IMG/VR virus record: IMGVR_UViG_3300047558_000137
Coordinates: 186,001-250,000 of that record
Direction: 5' to 3' (one strand)
DNA: 64,000 nucleotides
How positions within the stretch are numbered: position 1 is the first letter of the stretch; each line of letters starts with the position of its first letter. A program made the position numbers and the translations under genes. The notes below the pieces were generated by a model. That model worked only from the letters and a program-made list of their open reading frames with translations. It had not been told where the DNA came from and made no database searches. This document shows, piece by piece, positions 1 through 47,063 of the stretch.

Positions 1-124
1 CTAGTAATCTAGCAATAGTATCATTACCGCCGCCGGGACTATATGGAACTACAATTTTAGTTTCGTTTGCATGAACACACAAAGAAATTGCCATAGAAGC
101 AATTACAATTATTTTTTTAATCAT
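1..124 (-). CDS. Partial (5' end) Bug/TctC tripartite tricarboxylate transporter substrate-binding protein
   Basis: Manual translation from ATG at 124 gives MIKKIIVIASMAISLCVHANETKIVVPYSPGGGNDTIARLL, which runs off the window edge. It has a signal peptide followed by the IVVPxxPGGxxDxxAR Bug/TctC motif. Confidence 0.8.
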   Translation of the reverse strand, partial: MIKKIIVIASMAISLCVHANETKIVVPYSPGGGNDTIARLL

Positions 125-144
125 TGGATATATGTATTTGAATA

Positions 145-475
145 GTGGTAGCTTATTCTGTTACGAGGAAAGCTACCGAAACCCTAGGCGGCGTTTAGGC
201 TACCAATGCGAACTGTGAGTCGTTTGCGTTTACTTTTTTGCTTCTACGGCCGGGAAACCCCAACCCTAAGGGCTTTCACATTGCCCTGCTGTCCACTCTG
301 TTACTCTTGACCCAATCGATCCTGTGTCAGGCCCATTATAAAACACACTAAGCACGACTACATTGCCAAAAAGACCTGGAAGTCAAAAACAATGTACATA
401 ATGTGTTTTATGGTGGACCTGGGCGGCACTGCCCCGCCGTCTTGAATCCTTTTCTCTTTGCTTCATACAGCAATA
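145..475 (-). ncRNA. ssrA: Circularly permuted (two-piece) tmRNA, tag ANDSQFALVA
   Basis: On the minus strand the acceptor piece ends GGCGG-GGCAGTG-CCGCC-CAGGTCC-ACCA (CCA end at 411). An intervening hairpin follows at 335-410. The coding piece starts GGGCCTG at 334 and pairs with CAGGTCC to give G3:U70. The tag ORF is at 227-195 and AACAGAA is at 162-156. Outer ends are approximate. Confidence 0.93.
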
Positions 476-477
476 AC

Positions 478-921
478 TTAATACTCTTCTACTTTAACAA
501 TCTTTGCGGCAGTTGTCAAATATTCCCACACACTTTCATTGTAGTGTGGCTTACCTGCCCAATAGTTTTCTGCCGCTGATTTAACTTCAGCACTGTCAAT
601 TGCATGTCCGTCACCGATTAACATACTTACTTCACTGCCCCAGTTTAGATCGTGACGTTGCACAGGACCTTCTGGGACTACAGTAAATAACCAATCAGTT
701 GCACCACCAGCTAAATCTACATCATCTGGATCGCTACACATAAAAACACTTTGCTTATGTGATAGCATGTTTTGTGGACGATACATTTCCAATGGACGAT
801 AAAAGTCCGTATGCCCCCAATTGGCCTCATAGTTGTTGCGTGGGGTTAGAACTGTACCTACTGGTAATTCTGTGGAACTGCCGTGGTAAAATGTTGGACT
901 AGTAATCTCTGTAATACGCAT
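478..921 (-). CDS. Putative ADP-ribosyltransferase (Arr-like fold)
   Basis: FYHGS..LPVGTVLTP, VFMCSD, FTVVPEG and a C-terminal E strand resemble the Arr ART family. TAAATA lies just upstream. Confidence 0.55.
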   Translation of the reverse strand: MRITEITSPTFYHGSSTELPVGTVLTPRNNYEANWGHTDFYRPLEMYRPQNMLSHKQSVFMCSDPDDVDLAGGATDWLFTVVPEGPVQRHDLNWGSEVSMLIGDGHAIDSAEVKSAAENYWAGKPHYNESVWEYLTTAAKIVKVEEY

Positions 922-2788: not shown

Positions 2789-3613
2789 TTACTCTGCGTT
2801 CTTACCGCATTTAGCACGTTTAGCATTTGTTAACGCACCAAAGTCCACTGGCCATTCTTGACCAGGTGCAAGTTCTTTGGCGTTAGCTGGAAACTTATAT
2901 TGTACACCAGCTTGTTGTTGAATCTGTGCTACTGGAACACGGAACTTAGTTAAGTCATTGCCTAGGTTAACATAGGGCTTGGTGTGCGGAAATGCCCATC
3001 CAGCAACTGCACCTGTAGCATTGTTAATTACAATTTTATAATATCCATGTGGAACAATGATATCTTTCTTTGCACCGATAAACTCATCACCAGCGCCATA
3101 GAATGCGCCAACGTATATCGTAAAGGGTTGATTCAGTTGTACCGACCATCCTCTTACAGACGTTTCCAGTAATTTCCATATCCCACGATTTAGGCTTCCG
3201 TGTTGTGGGTACATATTTGTCATTAAAAAACTTTCGTACTCTACAATAGCACTCCAGCTTAAATCACCGTCTGGGGCAGCGTGTCCTTTATCGTAGCCAG
3301 TGCCAGCGTAATCATCTGGACGAGCACCACCTTGTACACTTGCGTCGGCAACGAAAGCGTTTGTGCGTGGGAAACAACCCAATGCGTTTTGTGGTAACAA
3401 TGTGTAGGCTACATAAGCAGGTATCTTGACAGGAGCATCATATGCTACTAGGTATGCTTCACGGCAAATAGGTTGCACTTGACGTGCTGTTTGTGCAAAG
3501 CCGTACGGGCTATGTGGTTGGCAAGCCTGTGGTGCCAATGGAGCTCGTTGATCCCAAGCATAACCTGATATGCTTAACGCCGCGAGAATTAGTGAAAAGA
3601 GAATTTTTTTCAT
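2789..3613 (-). CDS. Secreted DNA/RNA non-specific endonuclease (NucA/EndoG family)
   Basis: Signal peptide; YDKGH active-site motif; SFLMTNMYPQ..LNRGIWKLLE. Confidence 0.9.
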   Translation of the reverse strand: MKKILFSLILAALSISGYAWDQRAPLAPQACQPHSPYGFAQTARQVQPICREAYLVAYDAPVKIPAYVAYTLLPQNALGCFPRTNAFVADASVQGGARPDDYAGTGYDKGHAAPDGDLSWSAIVEYESFLMTNMYPQHGSLNRGIWKLLETSVRGWSVQLNQPFTIYVGAFYGAGDEFIGAKKDIIVPHGYYKIVINNATGAVAGWAFPHTKPYVNLGNDLTKFRVPVAQIQQQAGVQYKFPANAKELAPGQEWPVDFGALTNAKRAKCGKNAE

Positions 3614-9002: not shown

Positions 9003-10538
9003 ATGAACATCTATTTCTATAGTCCAAGCTCGGGCTATGTGAGACCGGAACAAGATCCGGACCTTTATCTAAACACCGTACCATTATACCTTGATAGCTA
9101 CATTAAAAATGAAGCTCCGCATCTCTATGAGCATATAACCTGGTGCAAAATACAATTATTAAGAAAGACCCAACAAGAAATTGTTGAACAACTAAAAGAA
9201 TACAACGCCGACATGTTATGTCTGAGCAGTTATATCTGGAACCATGTGCAAGTTATGGCTATAGCAACAGGAATTAAGCAATTCCTGCCAAACCTTATTG
9301 TAGTAGTTGGTGGTCCAAGTATTGATGTTTACCGAAATAGAGAATTTTTAAATCAACATATAGATGTTGACTATGCGGTTTATTCCCAAGGCGAAGAAGC
9401 ATTTGTGGAAATATTGGAGCATGAAATAAATCAGAGACCAATTGATCGGTTACGTGCATCAAATTTAAGTTGGCGAACTTCAACTGGAATTAGAGTTGCT
9501 GATCACAGAGTTTATAAAAAAACCAGTGGTAGTTATTATATCGATTCTAAACATTTACTTGAGCAAATAGTAGCAGATACAGAATATACTGGATACGAAT
9601 TTGCATTGCCTTATGAGACTAGTCGAGGGTGTCCGTTTAAATGCAGTTTTTGCGATTGGACCTCGGGTATTACACATAAGGTAAGCAAACGTCGATTTAA
9701 TTATCGAGATGAGTTTGAATTGTTTGGTAATCTAAACATATTGAAATTTTTTATGGCCGATGCAAACATTGGGCAATGGGACGACGACGTTGGTGTTGCC
9801 CATGCTATGTCTGATTTAAAACGTGAACGCGGATTCCAATTTCAAATACAAGGATGGAATGCTAGTAAAACCCACAAGAAAAATGCATTTGAAATGATGG
9901 ATATATTAGTCGGTGCAGACATTCTATATGCGCCTAAAATATCAGTGCAGGATATAAATGACCAAATTCTATTAGAAAATGATCGTCCTGATATCCCGTG
10001 GACTGAACATCTTACATATATACAACAATTAAAAAATAAACATCCGCATAAACCAGTAATAATAGAAATTATGATTGGACTGGTAGGACAAACTCGAGCG
10101 AGTATGCGTACTATGTTTAGAGAAATCTCTTTACATAAGTTTGTGTTTTTCCCACACCTATGGATTATGCTTCCCAATTCTCCCGCAGGTTACGACTTAG
10201 AATTTCGAAATAAAAATGAAATTGAAACTAGAATAATTGAATGCAATTATTTTATGAGTGAGCCAGCGGAAGGTGTAGTTAGCACCAAAAGTTATTCTCA
10301 AGAAGACTATGCCTACTTTGTTTTATTAACAGCCATTTATAGAATAATACAAATGGAATTTAAGCCGAAATACATCAGCATGAGTATTGATCAAATTGAA
10401 TCAACTGTTGACCGTTTAGTTTCTTCTGTAGTATTCCAAAAGGTATTTAAACAAACAGTATCCAATCTTCAACATAGTGTCGATTTATTTGACGCGGATG
10501 TCATAAGACAAATGGTATCGTTTTACTTAGTTGAATAA
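9003..10538 (+). CDS. B12-binding-domain radical SAM enzyme
   Basis: LSSYIWN..VVGGPS..GEEAF (B12-binding domain); ETSRGCPFKCSFCDW CxxxCxxC. Confidence 0.88.
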   Translation: MNIYFYSPSSGYVRPEQDPDLYLNTVPLYLDSYIKNEAPHLYEHITWCKIQLLRKTQQEIVEQLKEYNADMLCLSSYIWNHVQVMAIATGIKQFLPNLIVVVGGPSIDVYRNREFLNQHIDVDYAVYSQGEEAFVEILEHEINQRPIDRLRASNLSWRTSTGIRVADHRVYKKTSGSYYIDSKHLLEQIVADTEYTGYEFALPYETSRGCPFKCSFCDWTSGITHKVSKRRFNYRDEFELFGNLNILKFFMADANIGQWDDDVGVAHAMSDLKRERGFQFQIQGWNASKTHKKNAFEMMDILVGADILYAPKISVQDINDQILLENDRPDIPWTEHLTYIQQLKNKHPHKPVIIEIMIGLVGQTRASMRTMFREISLHKFVFFPHLWIMLPNSPAGYDLEFRNKNEIETRIIECNYFMSEPAEGVVSTKSYSQEDYAYFVLLTAIYRIIQMEFKPKYISMSIDQIESTVDRLVSSVVFQKVFKQTVSNLQHSVDLFDADVIRQMVSFYLVE

Positions 10539-38097: not shown

Positions 38098-39186
38098 TTA
38101 GTACGCAACTAATACGGTATCGCTTGCGCCGGTTTTCATTACCTTTTGGTAATCTTCCCATTCTTCTGCAAACTGAGCTGCAAATGCTGGTTGGTGATAC
38201 GGAGTCCATGGACGATCAATTACTTTAGCATAATCAAAACTGATTCTGTATGCAATTCTACCAGGATCGCCTGCAATCCTACGATGCAAAGTAACACATT
38301 GGTCAAACAAACAAATATCGTTATTTTGCTGATAGTAATGATCGTAGATTTGATTTGCACCATCCTCCATTACACCTTTTTCAATGATGTCAATGATTCG
38401 TTGAGATTCTTCGCGGCTCATGCCCTCGATACCTACAACTGTACAACGACTATAACGAATACCACGGATGCCGCCTGGGGTTGTAATTACCACTGGCGTA
38501 GGTACACTAGCATCATCGGGAACAAAATTGCCTTTTAAAAATTCTGCGTATTCAGGGACTGCGGTATCGTAATCATTGATAGCGCCGGTGCTCCAGGCAT
38601 GCACAAATCGCATTTCATCTAATTCACTACGGAAACTTTCGCTTAGGCTTTCGTAAAAATCAACTGTCTGAACAAACCCTGTTGCAGAGCCTATCATTTT
38701 TTGATCGCCCATTAATGCAACCCCGGGAGTAAAATTTAGTAGTGCAGCTTCGTTAGCATGCCAGTGTAAATCACCATTGGTAAAGATTCCCTGTAAGTTA
38801 CCCTGATCGTCGGTTACGCCAGTGATACGTAACAAACGATTACCGTGCTCAGTTACTTTAGTAGCATGGCGCATATATTTCATACTAATAGCCATATCCT
38901 CGGGCATATTAGTTGTTGGCCAAGTGTTTGGTGGACCATATTTCTTAATCATACGATAAGCAAACATGCTTCTCCAAGAATGTTTATTAACTCGATCTTC
39001 TCCCCAAGATTGTATCATTTCAGCATACTGATCATAGTTAATTTTAACATTTCGTAAAACAGTAACTAAATCTGTGGAATGGAATTTTCCAATTTCTGCG
39101 ATTTCTTCGGGAGTAATATGGTCGAAATTGAGGCCGTCGATATAATGCCCGAATCTTCCAAGGCCAGGGATCTTAGATATTTTCAT
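38098..39186 (-). CDS. TauD/TfdA-family dioxygenase
   Basis: LHWHANE, ATGFV, DICLFDQCVTLHRR..RIAYRISF. Confidence 0.8.
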   Translation of the reverse strand: MKISKIPGLGRFGHYIDGLNFDHITPEEIAEIGKFHSTDLVTVLRNVKINYDQYAEMIQSWGEDRVNKHSWRSMFAYRMIKKYGPPNTWPTTNMPEDMAISMKYMRHATKVTEHGNRLLRITGVTDDQGNLQGIFTNGDLHWHANEAALLNFTPGVALMGDQKMIGSATGFVQTVDFYESLSESFRSELDEMRFVHAWSTGAINDYDTAVPEYAEFLKGNFVPDDASVPTPVVITTPGGIRGIRYSRCTVVGIEGMSREESQRIIDIIEKGVMEDGANQIYDHYYQQNNDICLFDQCVTLHRRIAGDPGRIAYRISFDYAKVIDRPWTPYHQPAFAAQFAEEWEDYQKVMKTGASDTVLVAY

Positions 39187-45421: not shown

Positions 45422-45808
45422 TTAAGCAATCCAGCCCTGTCCGGATATATCATGATACCAAGTATAAAAGTTAGCAGGAATACTAAAAGTCCATGGATCC
45501 AATGTATCAATGTAACACTTTTTATTACTTGATAAGTGCTGATATTTTGGTAACACCTCTAGCCCATTCACTGTTAATCCAATATCTAATCCGCTTGTGC
45601 CTTCTTTAAACTCTATTAGATTAACATCCAGTTTAACAGGATCAAATAGATCTAATGTAAATGTAATTTTATCTACATTGATAATAAATCCGTTGAGCTT
45701 TACGAAACTATCCGTCTGGCCATAACGAGTTATTAATAGATCAACTACTAATTTTTGGTGTGTGTCAATAGCCGAGAGATCTGAGAAAGTCTTTATATCT
45801 TGGTACAT
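45422..45808 (-). CDS. Hypothetical protein
   Basis: Overlaps the end of the radical SAM gene. Confidence 0.6.
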   Translation of the reverse strand: MYQDIKTFSDLSAIDTHQKLVVDLLITRYGQTDSFVKLNGFIINVDKITFTLDLFDPVKLDVNLIEFKEGTSGLDIGLTVNGLEVLPKYQHLSSNKKCYIDTLDPWTFSIPANFYTWYHDISGQGWIA

Positions 45809-47063
45809 AATCTAAAATGGAATTCTTTCGTAGTGTTTCAAATCCCTTAAGGAATCTTATTAACTGACTTCTGTGTTGGTCTGCATCCTCGGGGACACTG
45901 TAGTTCTGCATAAAATTATAGTAGTCTATAATGGTGTCTGCAATTACCTGATTAATTCGGCTGTTATTGCGTAGGTTCAATTGTCCAGTGTGAACAAGTC
46001 CATGGCGTAGAATCACCGAAGCTATCTTATCGACAACTTCCTGTCTGATATCATCGGGCATAATCTCAATACGCAGGCAGGCTGGATCACTTAGTATATC
46101 GCAACTTTCAGCAATGACATTTTTCTCTATCATATATTCAAACAGTTGATCTAGTTCGTATGCTGTAAAAATATTAGGTGTAATACGGAGAGAAATGTAT
46201 AACCCACTTTGCTTTCGCAATTCAAGAAAGCTATCAATGTTGGCAAGTATGTCCCCAATCTTCCCGGGATACCTAACATAGTCATTTAAGTCTGTAACCG
46301 ATTCAATGCTAATGCCCATATGAAATTCTTTAAACTGTTTAATTAACTGTTCAACACGTTCGTTGTAAATTGTACCGTTGGTTGTTGTACCAACAATAAT
46401 TTCTTTGCTTAATCCTGCATCTATTAATGCCTGACATATATCATAGAAAGCTGAATCAAATAGCGTTTCGCCACCAAGGAAATGTATGTACTTAACTGGA
46501 ATTGTTTTTAGCTCTGAGACAAATTGATCCACTGCATCCCGAGTCCAACTGTGATATCGGTCGGGCTGTTTAAAAGTCTGGCTGTCAATTTGATGTAGCT
46601 TAACGTAGTCTTGTTCTAATCTACTGCTGGCGATGGGGTCACACATGATACAGGCGCTGTTACAAACATTGCCCAAATCAATTTGTAGATCAACTGGGTG
46701 CATGTCAGCTAAGCCACTATTATTTTGGCTGTGTTGAAAATGGCTGTAGTGCGGACTGCTTAGAGTCTGCAATTCAAATTGATCAGTTATTCCGCTTTTT
46801 AATAACTGTCTGCGGCGGCCGCTTAGTTTGCCAAATTGATCTTGGTAATAACAGTTTGCACAACCTGCGGGCTGTTGCCCTTCTAAAAATTGACTGCGTA
46901 GACTACGCATACGATCACTGTTATAAAACTCCATAACAGATGCGGTGCGTATATTCATAGGAGAACTGCCCCGATCTTTAAACCAGCGGCATTCTTGAAA
47001 GTCCCCGTTGTAGGTTAATCTAACGTGGAACCATGGACTAGAACAAAAAGTATTTTTTAACAT
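45765..47063 (-). CDS. Radical SAM enzyme with an N-terminal Twitch/SPASM-like Cys cluster
   Basis: FCSSPW..CANCY; GNVCNSACIMC; LGGET; TTNGT. Confidence 0.85.
   Translation of the reverse strand: MLKNTFCSSPWFHVRLTYNGDFQECRWFKDRGSSPMNIRTASVMEFYNSDRMRSLRSQFLEGQQPAGCANCYYQDQFGKLSGRRRQLLKSGITDQFELQTLSSPHYSHFQHSQNNSGLADMHPVDLQIDLGNVCNSACIMCDPIASSRLEQDYVKLHQIDSQTFKQPDRYHSWTRDAVDQFVSELKTIPVKYIHFLGGETLFDSAFYDICQALIDAGLSKEIIVGTTTNGTIYNERVEQLIKQFKEFHMGISIESVTDLNDYVRYPGKIGDILANIDSFLELRKQSGLYISLRITPNIFTAYELDQLFEYMIEKNVIAESCDILSDPACLRIEIMPDDIRQEVVDKIASVILRHGLVHTGQLNLRNNSRINQVIADTIIDYYNFMQNYSVPEDADQHRSQLIRFLKGFETLRKNSILDYVPRYKDFLRSLGY

What the first reader, a model, noticed from the sequence alone, without database searches (positions are those of the whole stretch)
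145..475. Phage-encoded two-piece tmRNA with alphaproteobacterial signatures
Seen: the order is acceptor piece (CCA), a 76-nt hairpin intervening segment, then the coding piece. It has G3:U70, T-loop GGCAGUG, AACAGAA in the terminal loop, and tag ANDSQFALVA. Established: permutation together with a GGCRGUA T-loop and AACAGAA is the alphaproteobacterial tmRNA signature. Inference: other genes (Bug/TctC next door, phasin-like, DUF3563-like) point to a Burkholderiales-like host. The phage may therefore carry a tmRNA of a different lineage and architecture from its host's, perhaps to escape host nucleases or to retune tagging.
Basis: partly seen in the sequence, partly recalled or inferred. Interest (0 to 1): 0.75.

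Follow-up and report, generated by a model that had tools for sequence, protein, structure and literature searches.

The report
Two-piece tmRNA gene in freshwater jumbo phage
A 374-kb freshwater phage carries a complete gene for a two-piece ribosome-rescue RNA (tmRNA); phage tmRNAs of this kind are already known, but this one belongs to a large uncultured clade that the usual annotation tool mostly misses.

Summary
Rfam tmRNA_permuted scores 102 bits against a cut-off of 47. The order is acceptor piece ending in CCA, a 76-nt hairpin spacer, then the coding piece. G3:U70, the GGCAGUG T-loop, AACAGAA and the tag ANDSQFALVA are all present.

The window is part of a 374-kb IMG/VR virus record from freshwater, with 34 tRNAs and no SmpB. 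The gene is not a one-off. One truncated scan found the same T-arm in at least 119 viral contigs, and 108 of them have the permuted order. Across 67 unique genes the stems covary strongly. Freshwater metatranscriptomes hold abundant RNA of relatives over the two mature pieces only.

The "alphaproteobacterial signature" is only half right. The tRNA-like domain is alpha-like, but the same T-loop occurs in one-piece tmRNAs of other phyla. AACAGAA also occurs in a betaproteobacterial two-piece gene. The beta model scores higher than the alpha model (68.8 against 57.5 bits). The 10-residue tag is beta/gamma-like.

The host is unresolved: DUF3563 is absent, the phasin match is sub-threshold, and only Bug/TctC holds. 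A phage two-piece tmRNA that mismatches its host is already published (phage Melnitz, 2022). I rate this a new variant of a known kind.

The parts
491..519 (-). Candidate sigma-70-type promoter: TTGACA, 17-nt spacer, TG-extended TAAAGT
   Evidence: 10 of 12 consensus matches plus TG. The count of such sites in this region is no higher than in shuffles, so this is a candidate only.
475..483 (-). Conserved -10-like box (TATTAAGTT here; TAAGTT or AAAGTT in relatives) just upstream of the acceptor piece
   Evidence: it lies at a fixed distance from the acceptor piece in most of the 67 relatives. RNA depth of relatives fades out at about 478-496.
411..473 (-). Acceptor piece. It holds the 5' strands of the inter-piece helices (P2a 472-468, P2c 448-442), the T arm (438-422, loop GGCAGUG 433-427), the acceptor 3' strand (421-415) and ACCA (414-411).
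   Evidence: The T stem and acceptor stem are 100% paired in 67 genes, with changes on both sides.
335..410 (-). Intervening segment of 76 nt, a hairpin whose closing stem pairs UAAAACACA with UGUGUUUUA and which ends ..UAUAAU before G1. It is presumed to be removed during maturation.
   Evidence: -22 kcal/mol, z = -4.1; the closing stem is kept in 55 of 62 unique relatives and covaries; zero RNA depth at 345-401 in 4 metatranscriptome runs (reads of relatives).
145..334 (-). Coding piece. It holds the acceptor 5' strand GGGCCUG (334-328), ACACAGGAUCGA, the P2c 3' strand (315-309), the P2a 3' strand (291-287), two conserved hairpins (about 286-270 and 266-248), the tag frame and the 3' pseudoknot.
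   Evidence: RNA depth of relatives reaches 13,545 over 136-344.
195..227 (-). Tag reading frame from GCA to UAA, encoding ANDSQFALVA. The stop codon sits in the loop of a P5-like helix.
   Evidence: the helix around the stop is 72% paired against 25-50% in slid controls. The pair at the Ala wobble base shows all four Watson-Crick types.
147..177 (-). 3' terminal hairpin or pseudoknot stem GGUAGCU/AGCUACC, with CCUCGUAACAGAA in the loop (AACAGAA at 162-156)
   Evidence: The stem covaries in relatives. CUCGUAACAGAA is present in 38 of 63 genes.
1..124 (-). Start of a Bug/TctC-family periplasmic binding-protein gene (312 aa, runs off the window start). Its ATG lies about 20 nt after the tmRNA 3' hairpin, with no terminator between.
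   Evidence: ORF; PF03401 clusters, score 0.97; no minus-strand terminator.

Best explanation
This is a working ssrA gene for a circularly permuted, two-piece tmRNA carried by a 374-kb freshwater phage. It is a member of a large clade of phage-borne permuted tmRNA genes.

Proposed mechanism:
1. One precursor is transcribed on the minus strand from a promoter just upstream of the acceptor piece.
2. The acceptor stem and T arm form a tRNA-like minihelix. The closing stem of the spacer hairpin brings the CCA end and G1 together.
3. Host RNase P cuts 5' of G1, and host 3'-end enzymes free the encoded CCA. This removes the 76-nt spacer.
4. The two pieces stay joined by the 7-bp acceptor stem and two inter-piece helices of 7 and 5 bp.
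5. Host AlaRS charges the RNA through G3:U70. Host SmpB and EF-Tu deliver it to ribosomes stalled on broken mRNAs in the infected cell.
6. Translation resumes at GCA and adds ANDSQFALVA, then stops at UAA. The ribosome is freed and the tagged peptide goes to host ClpXP-type proteases.

The likely benefit is extra ribosome-rescue capacity while the phage, which also carries 34 tRNAs and a non-specific nuclease, takes over translation and breaks down host nucleic acids.

What is shown: the gene anatomy, the covariation, clade membership, and transcription of relatives. What is inferred: processing, charging, SmpB use, tagging, and the benefit to the phage.
For: - Covariance models: RF04321 102.2 bits against 47; RF01849 57.5 bits against 50; RF01850 68.8 bits.
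- All parts are in the right order with exact coordinates.
Of these, 108 have the 5' acceptor strand 37-373 nt downstream of CCA.
- Covariation over 67 unique genes: acceptor stem 100% paired with G3:U70 invariant; T stem 100% paired; 7-bp inter-piece helix 95% paired with both-side changes at 7 of 7 pairs; 5-bp helix 84.5% paired with both-side changes at 5 of 5 pairs.
- The tag frame is kept, and the helix around the stop covaries with synonymous codon changes.
- Conserved hairpins lie upstream of the tag.
- In four freshwater metatranscriptome runs, relatives' RNA gives depth only over 136-344 and 402-496, up to 13,545. Depth is zero over the spacer and the flanks.
- A promoter-like site lies at 519-491.
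- The phage has no SmpB and no other tmRNA. It carries 34 tRNAs and an Endonuclease_NS gene 2.3 kb away.
- Published precedent for phage tmRNAs, two-piece ones included: PMC9004378, PMC7162821, PMC4131195.
Against: - No RNA data exist for this exact phage. Every RNA contig laid on the region carries the A>G change at 202 (tag ...ALAA), so all are relatives.
- The spacer is not conserved between relatives. The depth gap over it therefore does not prove processing.
- The T-loop GGCAGUG is not the standard loop, and compatibility with the unknown host's SmpB is untested.
- No terminator follows the gene, so the 3' end is undefined.
- The window's tag ends ..LVA and not ..LAA. From my own knowledge, LVA variants of the ssrA tag are still degraded rapidly in E. 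coli.
- ARAGORN does not call the gene.
Confidence: 0.8

Rival explanations
1. The gene was captured recently from an alphaproteobacterial host. On this view it marks a host switch, or an alphaproteobacterial host, as was proposed for phage Melnitz.
For: The T-loop GGCAGUG and the ..ACAGGAUCGA.. segment are shared with the two-piece genes of Micavibrio, Acetobacteraceae and Rhodospirillales. The alpha model passes its cut-off. In the tree of the tRNA-like domain, the phage genes fall on the alpha side of a 100/99 split.
Against: - blastn finds no similarity to any alpha gene collected beyond the T arm.
- The window lies in its own phage clade of 37 unique rows (support 92/96), and the alpha genes cluster apart from it.
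- The beta model scores higher.
- Across 16 relatives the better-scoring model is alpha in 8 and beta in 8.
- The tag is a 10-mer of beta/gamma type, whereas alpha tags in my sample are 11-21 residues long.
- The split is partly circular, because those sequences were collected by their T-loop.
Confidence: 0.12
2. The gene is a diverged copy of the two-piece tmRNA of a betaproteobacterial (Burkholderiales-type) host. On this view there is no lineage mismatch.
For: - The beta model is the best of the three older models (68.8 bits). One relative passes its cut-off (L093, 114.3 bits).
- The tag type matches ANDENFALAA and ANDERFALAA.
- The spacer design CCA-AAAG...CUUUUGAU-G1 and GGCAACAGAA are shared with L271.
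- A Bug/TctC gene lies next door.
Against: - The score is below the beta cut-off of 84.
- Beta two-piece genes have the standard T-loop (GGUUCGAUU or GGUUCAAUU) and ..CUGGUUUCGAC...
- Only 3 of 151 sampled genomes of that order have a strong permuted gene, and none is of the phage type.
- The exact tag was not found in 401 genomes of that order.
Confidence: 0.1
3. The RNA is a decoy that titrates host SmpB or blocks host trans-translation and does not rescue ribosomes. The TLD-only RNA of mycobacteriophage DS6A is thought to act this way.
For: The phage has no SmpB of its own. The tRNA-like domain is unusual. The DS6A precedent is described in PMC4131195 and PMC11915505.
Against: The full tag frame, the resume context, the helix around the stop and the upstream hairpins are conserved. 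They covary across 63-67 unique genes. A pure decoy would not need them.
Confidence: 0.04
4. The region is an attachment-site remnant or a fragment of host ssrA picked up by imprecise excision, with no function of its own.
For: tmRNA genes are common integration sites for phages and genomic islands (PMC4383910, listed).
Against: The gene is complete, with a promoter-like site, both pieces and the tag. It is conserved with compensatory changes in more than 100 viral contigs and is transcribed in lakes.
Confidence: 0.02

Closest known systems
ssrA of Methylophilales (OM43) phage Melnitz, MZ577097 45984-46436 (Buchholz et al. 2022, PMC9004378)
   Same: - A phage-encoded permuted tmRNA with no phage SmpB reported.
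- RF04321 scores 113 bits.
- An alpha-like T-loop (GGCAGUA).
- The same spacer design: a closing stem UAAACACUU/AAGUGUUUA ending UAUGAU before G1.
- The same 3' pseudoknot with AACAGAA.
- The authors argued that the gene is of a different lineage from its host's.
   Different: - Melnitz is a marine T4-like phage of 141 kb.
- Its tag is 14 residues long (ANDNYVPVDYALAA).
- ARAGORN finds it.
- Its sequence has only 36 bits of blastn similarity to the family here.
- A glutamine riboswitch follows it, and none was found in the window.
Alphaproteobacterial two-piece tmRNA (Rfam RF01849; Caulobacter, Keiler et al. 2000)
   Same: The gene order, an encoded CCA, the GGCAGUG/GGCRGUA T-loop..A(A/C)ACAGGAUCGA.., and the 3' pseudoknot with GGCAACAGAA.
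   Different: - The score is only 57.5 bits. True alpha genes score 139-148 bits on RF04321 against 102 here.
- Alpha tags in my sample are 11-21 residues long.
- There is no sequence similarity outside the T arm.
- The phage genes form a separate clade.
Betaproteobacterial two-piece tmRNA (Rfam RF01850; Sharkady and Williams 2004)
   Same: It is the best-scoring older model (68.8 bits). It shares the 10-residue ANDxxFALAA-type tag, the context upstream of the resume codon, the spacer ends, and an AACAGAA-type loop in L271.
   Different: The score is below the gathering score of 84. Beta genes have the standard T-loop and ..UGGUUUCGAC... CCA is not always encoded in them (L269, L270).
One-piece tmRNAs of phages (mycobacteriophage Bxz1 group, Bacillus phage G) and tmRNAs of huge phages (PMC4131195, PMC7162821)
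   Same: A phage carries its own ribosome-rescue RNA, often alongside many tRNAs.
   Different: The Bxz1-group and phage G genes are listed as phage ssrA with no mention of permutation; that they are one-piece is from my own knowledge. PMC7162821 reports tmRNAs and SmpB among huge phages. This phage has no SmpB.

Membership tests
Permuted (two-piece) tmRNA, Rfam RF04321 | Covariance-model score at or above the gathering score | tested here: met
   102.2 bits against 47, E = 8.9e-19, full model 1-213.
Permuted (two-piece) tmRNA, Rfam RF04321 | Gene order: acceptor piece ending in CCA, then the intervening sequence, then the coding piece starting with the acceptor 5' strand | tested here: met
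   473->411, 410->335 and 334->145 on the minus strand.
Permuted (two-piece) tmRNA, Rfam RF04321 | A 7-bp acceptor stem with the G3:U70 alanine identity pair, and a T arm | tested here: met
   GGGCCUG pairs with CAGGUCC. G3:U70 is invariant in 67 of 67 relatives, and both stems are 100% paired with compensatory changes. The T-loop is the non-standard GGCAGUG.
Permuted (two-piece) tmRNA, Rfam RF04321 | A tag frame that resumes at an Ala codon and ends in a hydrophobic degradation signal plus a stop | tested here: met
   GCA...GCC UAA encodes ANDSQFALVA. Of 67 relatives, 63 have a tag ending AA or VA.
Permuted (two-piece) tmRNA, Rfam RF04321 | The mature RNA exists as two base-paired pieces with the spacer removed | tested here: inconclusive
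   Metatranscriptome contigs of relatives cover only the two pieces. The spacer diverges between relatives, and no reads of this phage itself were seen.
Permuted (two-piece) tmRNA, Rfam RF04321 | Acts together with SmpB in trans-translation | not testable with these tools
   No SmpB (PF01668) is in the phage genome. Use of host SmpB is inferred.
alpha_tmRNA, Rfam RF01849 | Score at or above the gathering score, and the best of the lineage-specific models | tested here: inconclusive
   57.5 bits passes the cut-off of 50, but the beta model scores 68.8 bits. Among 16 relatives, alpha is best in 8 and beta in 8.
alpha_tmRNA, Rfam RF01849 | An alpha-type tRNA-like domain (T-loop GGCRGUR and ..AGGAUCGA..) | tested here: met
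   This is not exclusive to alpha: the same T-loop occurs in one-piece tmRNAs of Saccharibacteria, Gracilibacteria and Elusimicrobia.
alpha_tmRNA, Rfam RF01849 | Groups with alphaproteobacterial genes by sequence, and has an alpha-type tag | tested here: not met
   No blastn similarity beyond the T arm. The window's clade of 37 phage rows has support 92/96. The tag is a 10-mer, unlike the alpha tags of 11-21 residues.
beta_tmRNA, Rfam RF01850 | Score at or above the gathering score | tested here: not met
   68.8 bits against 84.
beta_tmRNA, Rfam RF01850 | The standard T-loop and ..UGGUUUCGAC.. of beta two-piece genes | tested here: not met
   L269-L271 have GGUUCGAYU or GGUUCAAUU. The window has GGCAGUG.

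The most novel reading that the evidence does not exclude
The window's gene may belong to a phage-specific fourth lineage of permuted tmRNA. This lineage would be mosaic, with an alpha-like tRNA domain joined to a beta-like tag region and spacer ends. It is widespread and highly transcribed in freshwater phages and is mostly invisible to ARAGORN-based annotation. Its intervening sequence serves as a slot for small protein genes, so that one precursor is both a tmRNA precursor and an mRNA. In relatives, ORFs of 23-120 codons fill the spacer almost exactly, and one of them is a full-length DUF2061 protein.
Probability: 0.4. Interest if true: 0.65.

Novelty: new variant of a known kind. Interest (0 to 1): 0.45.

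Why it matters
Phage-encoded tmRNAs, two-piece ones included, are already published. The bare finding is therefore not new, and neither is the idea of a lineage mismatch with the host.

What the follow-up adds is scale and anatomy:
- A conserved clade of more than 100 uncultured, mostly freshwater phage contigs carries this gene.
- Its RNA is abundant in lake metatranscriptomes.
- It matches neither the alpha nor the beta model well.
- ARAGORN, which several phage studies and pipelines cited here (PMC9004378, PMC7162821) use to call tmRNAs, finds only 16 of 68 of these genes. Counts of phage tmRNAs are therefore probably too low.

If the tag tracks the host while the tRNA-like domain stays of the phage type, the clade offers a natural experiment. 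It could show which parts of tmRNA must match host proteases and which must match AlaRS, SmpB and the ribosome. The protein genes nested in the spacer of relatives would be a new way of packing a gene inside an RNA gene.

Tried and rejected
- ARAGORN on the window and on the whole genome gave no tmRNA call. This is a tool miss: it finds 13 of 13 alpha and beta controls but only 16 of 68 family genes.
- blastn against 50,697 deposited phage genomes, with the window gene and two relatives, found no family member. The only hits were a generic terminator downstream of one relative's gene.
Absence of the phage type from cellular genomes is therefore not shown.
- Host identification failed:
  - DUF3563 is absent and the phasin match is sub-threshold.
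  - The ESM Atlas places the Bug protein only as Pseudomonadota.
  - The Bug protein has no strong hit in 101 genomes of the Burkholderiales-type order.
  - The exact tag is not in 401 genomes of that order.
  - A virion protein has only distant domain-level hits to a Salicola jumbo phage and to cyanophages.
  - Genomes reached through the genome search carry no names, so L271's organism could not be identified.
- TAG recoding, suggested by a CUA-anticodon tRNA, is not needed. Coding density is already about 82% under the standard code.
- Synteny around the gene in relatives: none. They share scattered genes at 40-79% amino-acid identity, but the neighbourhood of the tmRNA gene differs.
- I did not interpret the adapter-flanked contig ends as mature RNA ends, because there were too few of them and they disagreed.

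Full report
OBSERVATION

The feature is real and lies on the minus strand. Rfam's cmscan of the whole window gave two matches over their gathering scores. One is tmRNA_permuted (RF04321) at 195-472, with 102.2 bits against 47 and E = 8.9e-19. The other is alpha_tmRNA (RF01849) at 144-523, with 57.5 bits against 50.

Reading the reverse complement gives this layout:
- An acceptor piece at about 473->411. Its T arm is GGCGG/GGCAGUG/CCGCC (438-422). It ends CAGGUCC-ACCA (421-411).
- A 76-nt intervening segment (410->335). It folds into a single hairpin of -22 kcal/mol, z = -4.1.
- A coding piece that starts GGGCCUG (334-328). This strand pairs with CAGGUCC to give a 7-bp acceptor stem with G3:U70.
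- A tag frame GCA AAC GAC UCA CAG UUC GCA UUG GUA GCC UAA (227-195), which reads ANDSQFALVA.
- A 3' hairpin GGUAGCU...AGCUACC (177-147) with AACAGAA (162-156) in its loop.

No ORF of 90 aa or more overlaps the region. ARAGORN reported nothing in the window or the genome.

CONTEXT

The window is bases 186001-250000 of a 374,314-bp IMG/VR virus record that CheckV rates 100% complete. Its G+C content is 40.7%, and it carries 34 tRNA genes, most of them in an array at 298-317 kb.

The window holds virion structural proteins, a tail-spike-like protein and ribonucleotide reductase. It also holds a non-specific endonuclease 2.3 kb from the tmRNA gene. The phage has no SmpB and no standard tmRNA.

DNA runs of freshwater and aquatic metagenomes from several studies hold the region. 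"Phage-encoded" is therefore correct, and the habitat is freshwater.

A sigma-70-like promoter (TTGACA, 17 nt, TG-extended TAAAGT) lies at 519-491 on the minus strand. No terminator lies between the tmRNA 3' hairpin and the ATG at 124 of a 312-aa Bug/TctC gene.

THE GENE IS ONE OF A LARGE PHAGE CLADE

I searched IMG/VR for a pattern made of the T arm with its GGCAGUG loop, the acceptor 3' strand and CCA. In 108 of them the 5' acceptor strand and the GGATCGA motif lie 37-373 nt downstream of CCA, which is the permuted order. Most of the rest are cut by contig ends.

There are 67 unique genes apart from the window's. Their covariation is strong:

| Helix | Cells paired | Pairs with changes on both sides |
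|---|---|---|
| Acceptor stem (G3:U70 invariant) | 100% | 2 of 7 (pairs 4 and 5) |
| T stem | 100% | 2 of 5 |
| Inter-piece helix, 7 bp (GAUUCAA with UUGGGUC) | 95% | 7 of 7 |
| Inter-piece helix, 5 bp (UGCUG with CAGCA) | 84.5% | 5 of 5 |

Further conserved structure:
- Two hairpins upstream of the tag are conserved with compensatory changes.
- A helix that encloses the stop codon is 72% paired, against 25-50% in slid controls. Its pair at the wobble base of the penultimate Ala codon shows all four Watson-Crick types.
- The spacer varies in sequence and length. Its closing stem is kept and covaries in 55 of 62 unique spacers, and it ends (U)AU(A/G)AU before G1.

Most tags are 10-mers: ANDSQFALAA in 18 genes, ANDEQFALAA in 9, and the window's ANDSQFALVA in 2. 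Twelve genes have tags of 11-24 residues on the same RNA chassis.

The pattern I searched with fixed parts of the T arm and the acceptor 3' strand. Those fixed positions are not independent evidence, but the covarying positions were left free.

EXPRESSION

Four freshwater metatranscriptome runs were laid on window 60-620 at 85% likeness or more. Depth appears only in two blocks. One is 136-344, the coding piece, with summed word depth up to 13,545. The other is 402-496, the acceptor piece, with depth up to 150. Depth is zero over the spacer (345-401) and the flanks (497-620).

All the contigs carry A>G at 202 (tag ..ALAA), so they come from relatives and not from this phage. Because spacers diverge between relatives, the gap fits two-piece maturation but does not prove it. 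The data do show that the family is transcribed, and strongly.

WHICH LINEAGE?

- The GGCAGUG T-loop and the ..ACAGGAUCGA.. segment are shared with two-piece genes of Micavibrio, Acetobacteraceae and Rhodospirillales.
- In a 96-column tree of the tRNA-like domain, a 100/99 split separates two groups. One holds the phage genes, the alpha genes and the candidate-phyla one-piece genes. The other holds Burkholiales-type one-piece genes and beta two-piece genes. That split is partly circular, because the first group was collected by its T-loop.
- The same T-loop occurs in one-piece tmRNAs of Saccharibacteria, Gracilibacteria and Elusimicrobia.
- AACAGAA sits in the loop of a 3' pseudoknot. That pseudoknot has the same topology in an alpha gene (L265) and a beta two-piece gene (L271..GGCAACAGAAUAGG..).
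- The beta model scores higher than the alpha model (68.8 against 57.5 bits), though below its cut-off of 84.
- Among 16 relatives the better older model is alpha in 8 and beta in 8, at 51-123 bits. True alpha and beta genes score 139-166 bits on RF04321, against 80-120 for the phage genes.
- The tag, the context of the resume codon and the spacer ends (CCA-AAAG...CUUUUGAU-G1) look like the beta gene L271.
- blastn finds no similarity between the window gene and any bacterial gene collected, beyond the T arm.
- The window falls in a phage-only clade of 37 unique rows with support 92/96.

I read the gene as a member of a distinct, mosaic phage clade. I do not read it as a recent copy of an alpha or a beta gene.

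HOST

- DUF3563 is not in the phage genome, though that search rang in no control genome.
- Phasin_2 gives 15 bits, below its cut-off of 24.9.
- The Bug protein has no match at E <= 1e-75 in 101 genomes of the order that contains Rhodoferax.
- The exact tag is not found in 401 genomes of that order.
- A virion protein has only distant hits to cultured phages.

The 10-mer tag of ANDxxFALAA type suggests a beta- or gammaproteobacterial host, but this is inference.

In 151 sampled genomes of that order, 3 have a strong beta-type two-piece gene. The others give only scores of about 51 bits or less, and the four borderline loci I read (L272-L275) are one-piece genes. None is of the phage type. If the host belongs to that order, the phage tmRNA would differ from the host's at least in its tRNA-like domain, and probably in architecture.

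COMPARISON WITH WHAT IS KNOWN

- Phage tmRNAs have long been known: the Bxz1 group, phage G, and the TLD-only RNA of DS6A (PMC4131195).
- Huge phages carry tmRNAs and SmpB (PMC7162821).
- Buchholz et al. 2022 (PMC9004378) described a two-piece ssrA in OM43 phage Melnitz and argued that it is alpha-like although the host is not. They counted 53 two-piece genes among 133 unique phage tmRNAs, 50 of them from aquatic phages.

I fetched the Melnitz gene. It scores 113 bits on RF04321 and has T-loop GGCAGUA, the same spacer closing-stem design and the same AACAGAA pseudoknot. Its tag is 14 residues long, and it has almost no sequence similarity to the family here.

No member of this family is among 50,697 deposited phage genomes by blastn. 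ARAGORN 1.2.41 finds all 13 alpha and beta controls but only 16 of 68 family genes.

VERDICT

The gene is a genuine phage two-piece tmRNA, most likely used with host AlaRS, SmpB and EF-Tu to rescue stalled ribosomes during infection. It is a new variant of a known kind. Interest is moderate, 0.45.

The most novel reading that remains open has three parts: a phage-specific mosaic lineage, under-annotation by ARAGORN, and a spacer that carries protein genes in relatives.

Noticed in passing
Relatives: L048:2886-3248(+), L064:6984-7193(+), L045:3292-3501(-), L033:3053-3271(-), L144:2754-2966(-), L090:964-1173(-), L046:7467-7625(+), L071:4627-4941(+): In relatives with long spacers (88-373 nt), one ORF fills the tmRNA intervening sequence almost exactly. 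An AAGGA Shine-Dalgarno-like motif follows CCA directly. The start codon lies 9-12 nt into the spacer, and the stop is the UGA or UAA of the conserved ..UAUGAU or ..UAUAAU end just before G1. The ORFs are 23-120 codons long and unrelated to one another. Two are full-length DUF2061 membrane proteins (75.7 and 72.6 bits). The window's own 76-nt spacer has no such ORF. I know of no report of protein genes nested in a permuted tmRNA spacer.
   Followed up: partly
window 145-473 and loci L026-L144: ARAGORN 1.2.41 calls only 16 of 68 genes of this family and misses every ANDSQFALAA, ANDSKFALAA and ANESRFLMAA type, the window's included. It of 13 alpha and beta bacterial two-piece genes. Phage annotation that relies on ARAGORN will undercount these tmRNAs.
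   Followed up: yes
G000:C1:176114-176189 (about 10 kb before the window start) and G000 298-317 kb: The phage has 34 tRNA genes, including one with a CUA anticodon (an amber suppressor, which ARAGORN labels Pyl). TAG ends only 22 of 305 long stop-to-stop frames. Coding density is about 82% under the standard code, so there is no sign that TAG is recoded genome-wide.
   Followed up: partly
L036:2633-3098 (+): In one relative the tmRNA gene lies inside a tRNA array, about 1.5 kb from a GOLLD RNA (RF02032, 202.4 bits against 150). In several relatives (L036, L039, L043, L045) the tmRNA gene sits among tRNA genes. In the window it lies more than 110 kb from the tRNA array.
   Followed up: no
window 1-124 (-), continuing to G000 184639+548: A 312-aa Bug/TctC periplasmic binding protein with a signal-peptide-like N-terminus starts about 20 nt after the tmRNA 3' hairpin, with no terminator between them. 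It may be co-transcribed with the tmRNA precursor. It is an unusual auxiliary gene for a phage.
   Followed up: partly
DUF3563 (PF12086) has no match in the phage genome. The phasin-like ORF reaches only 15 bits on Phasin_2, against a cut-off of 24.9.
   Followed up: yes
window 2789-3613 (-), 38098-39186 (-), 45765-47063 (-), 9003-10538 (+): Auxiliary-looking genes lie near the tmRNA gene: a DNA/RNA non-specific endonuclease (125 bits), a TauD-like taurine dioxygenase (PHROG 24590), a radical-SAM protein and a protein with a B12-binding domain.
   Followed up: no
Loci L105, L031, L053, L048, L071, L109 compared with G000: The contigs that carry related tmRNA genes share scattered protein genes with this phage at 40-79% amino-acid identity. 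The genes next to the tmRNA map to quite different places in G000, so the position of the tmRNA gene is not conserved.
   Followed up: partly
Run X40: One RNA run labelled with a single organism (coded 'organism A') and not as a metagenome holds a few 31-mers of the tmRNA region. It could be a culture that contains a relative or a host.
   Followed up: no
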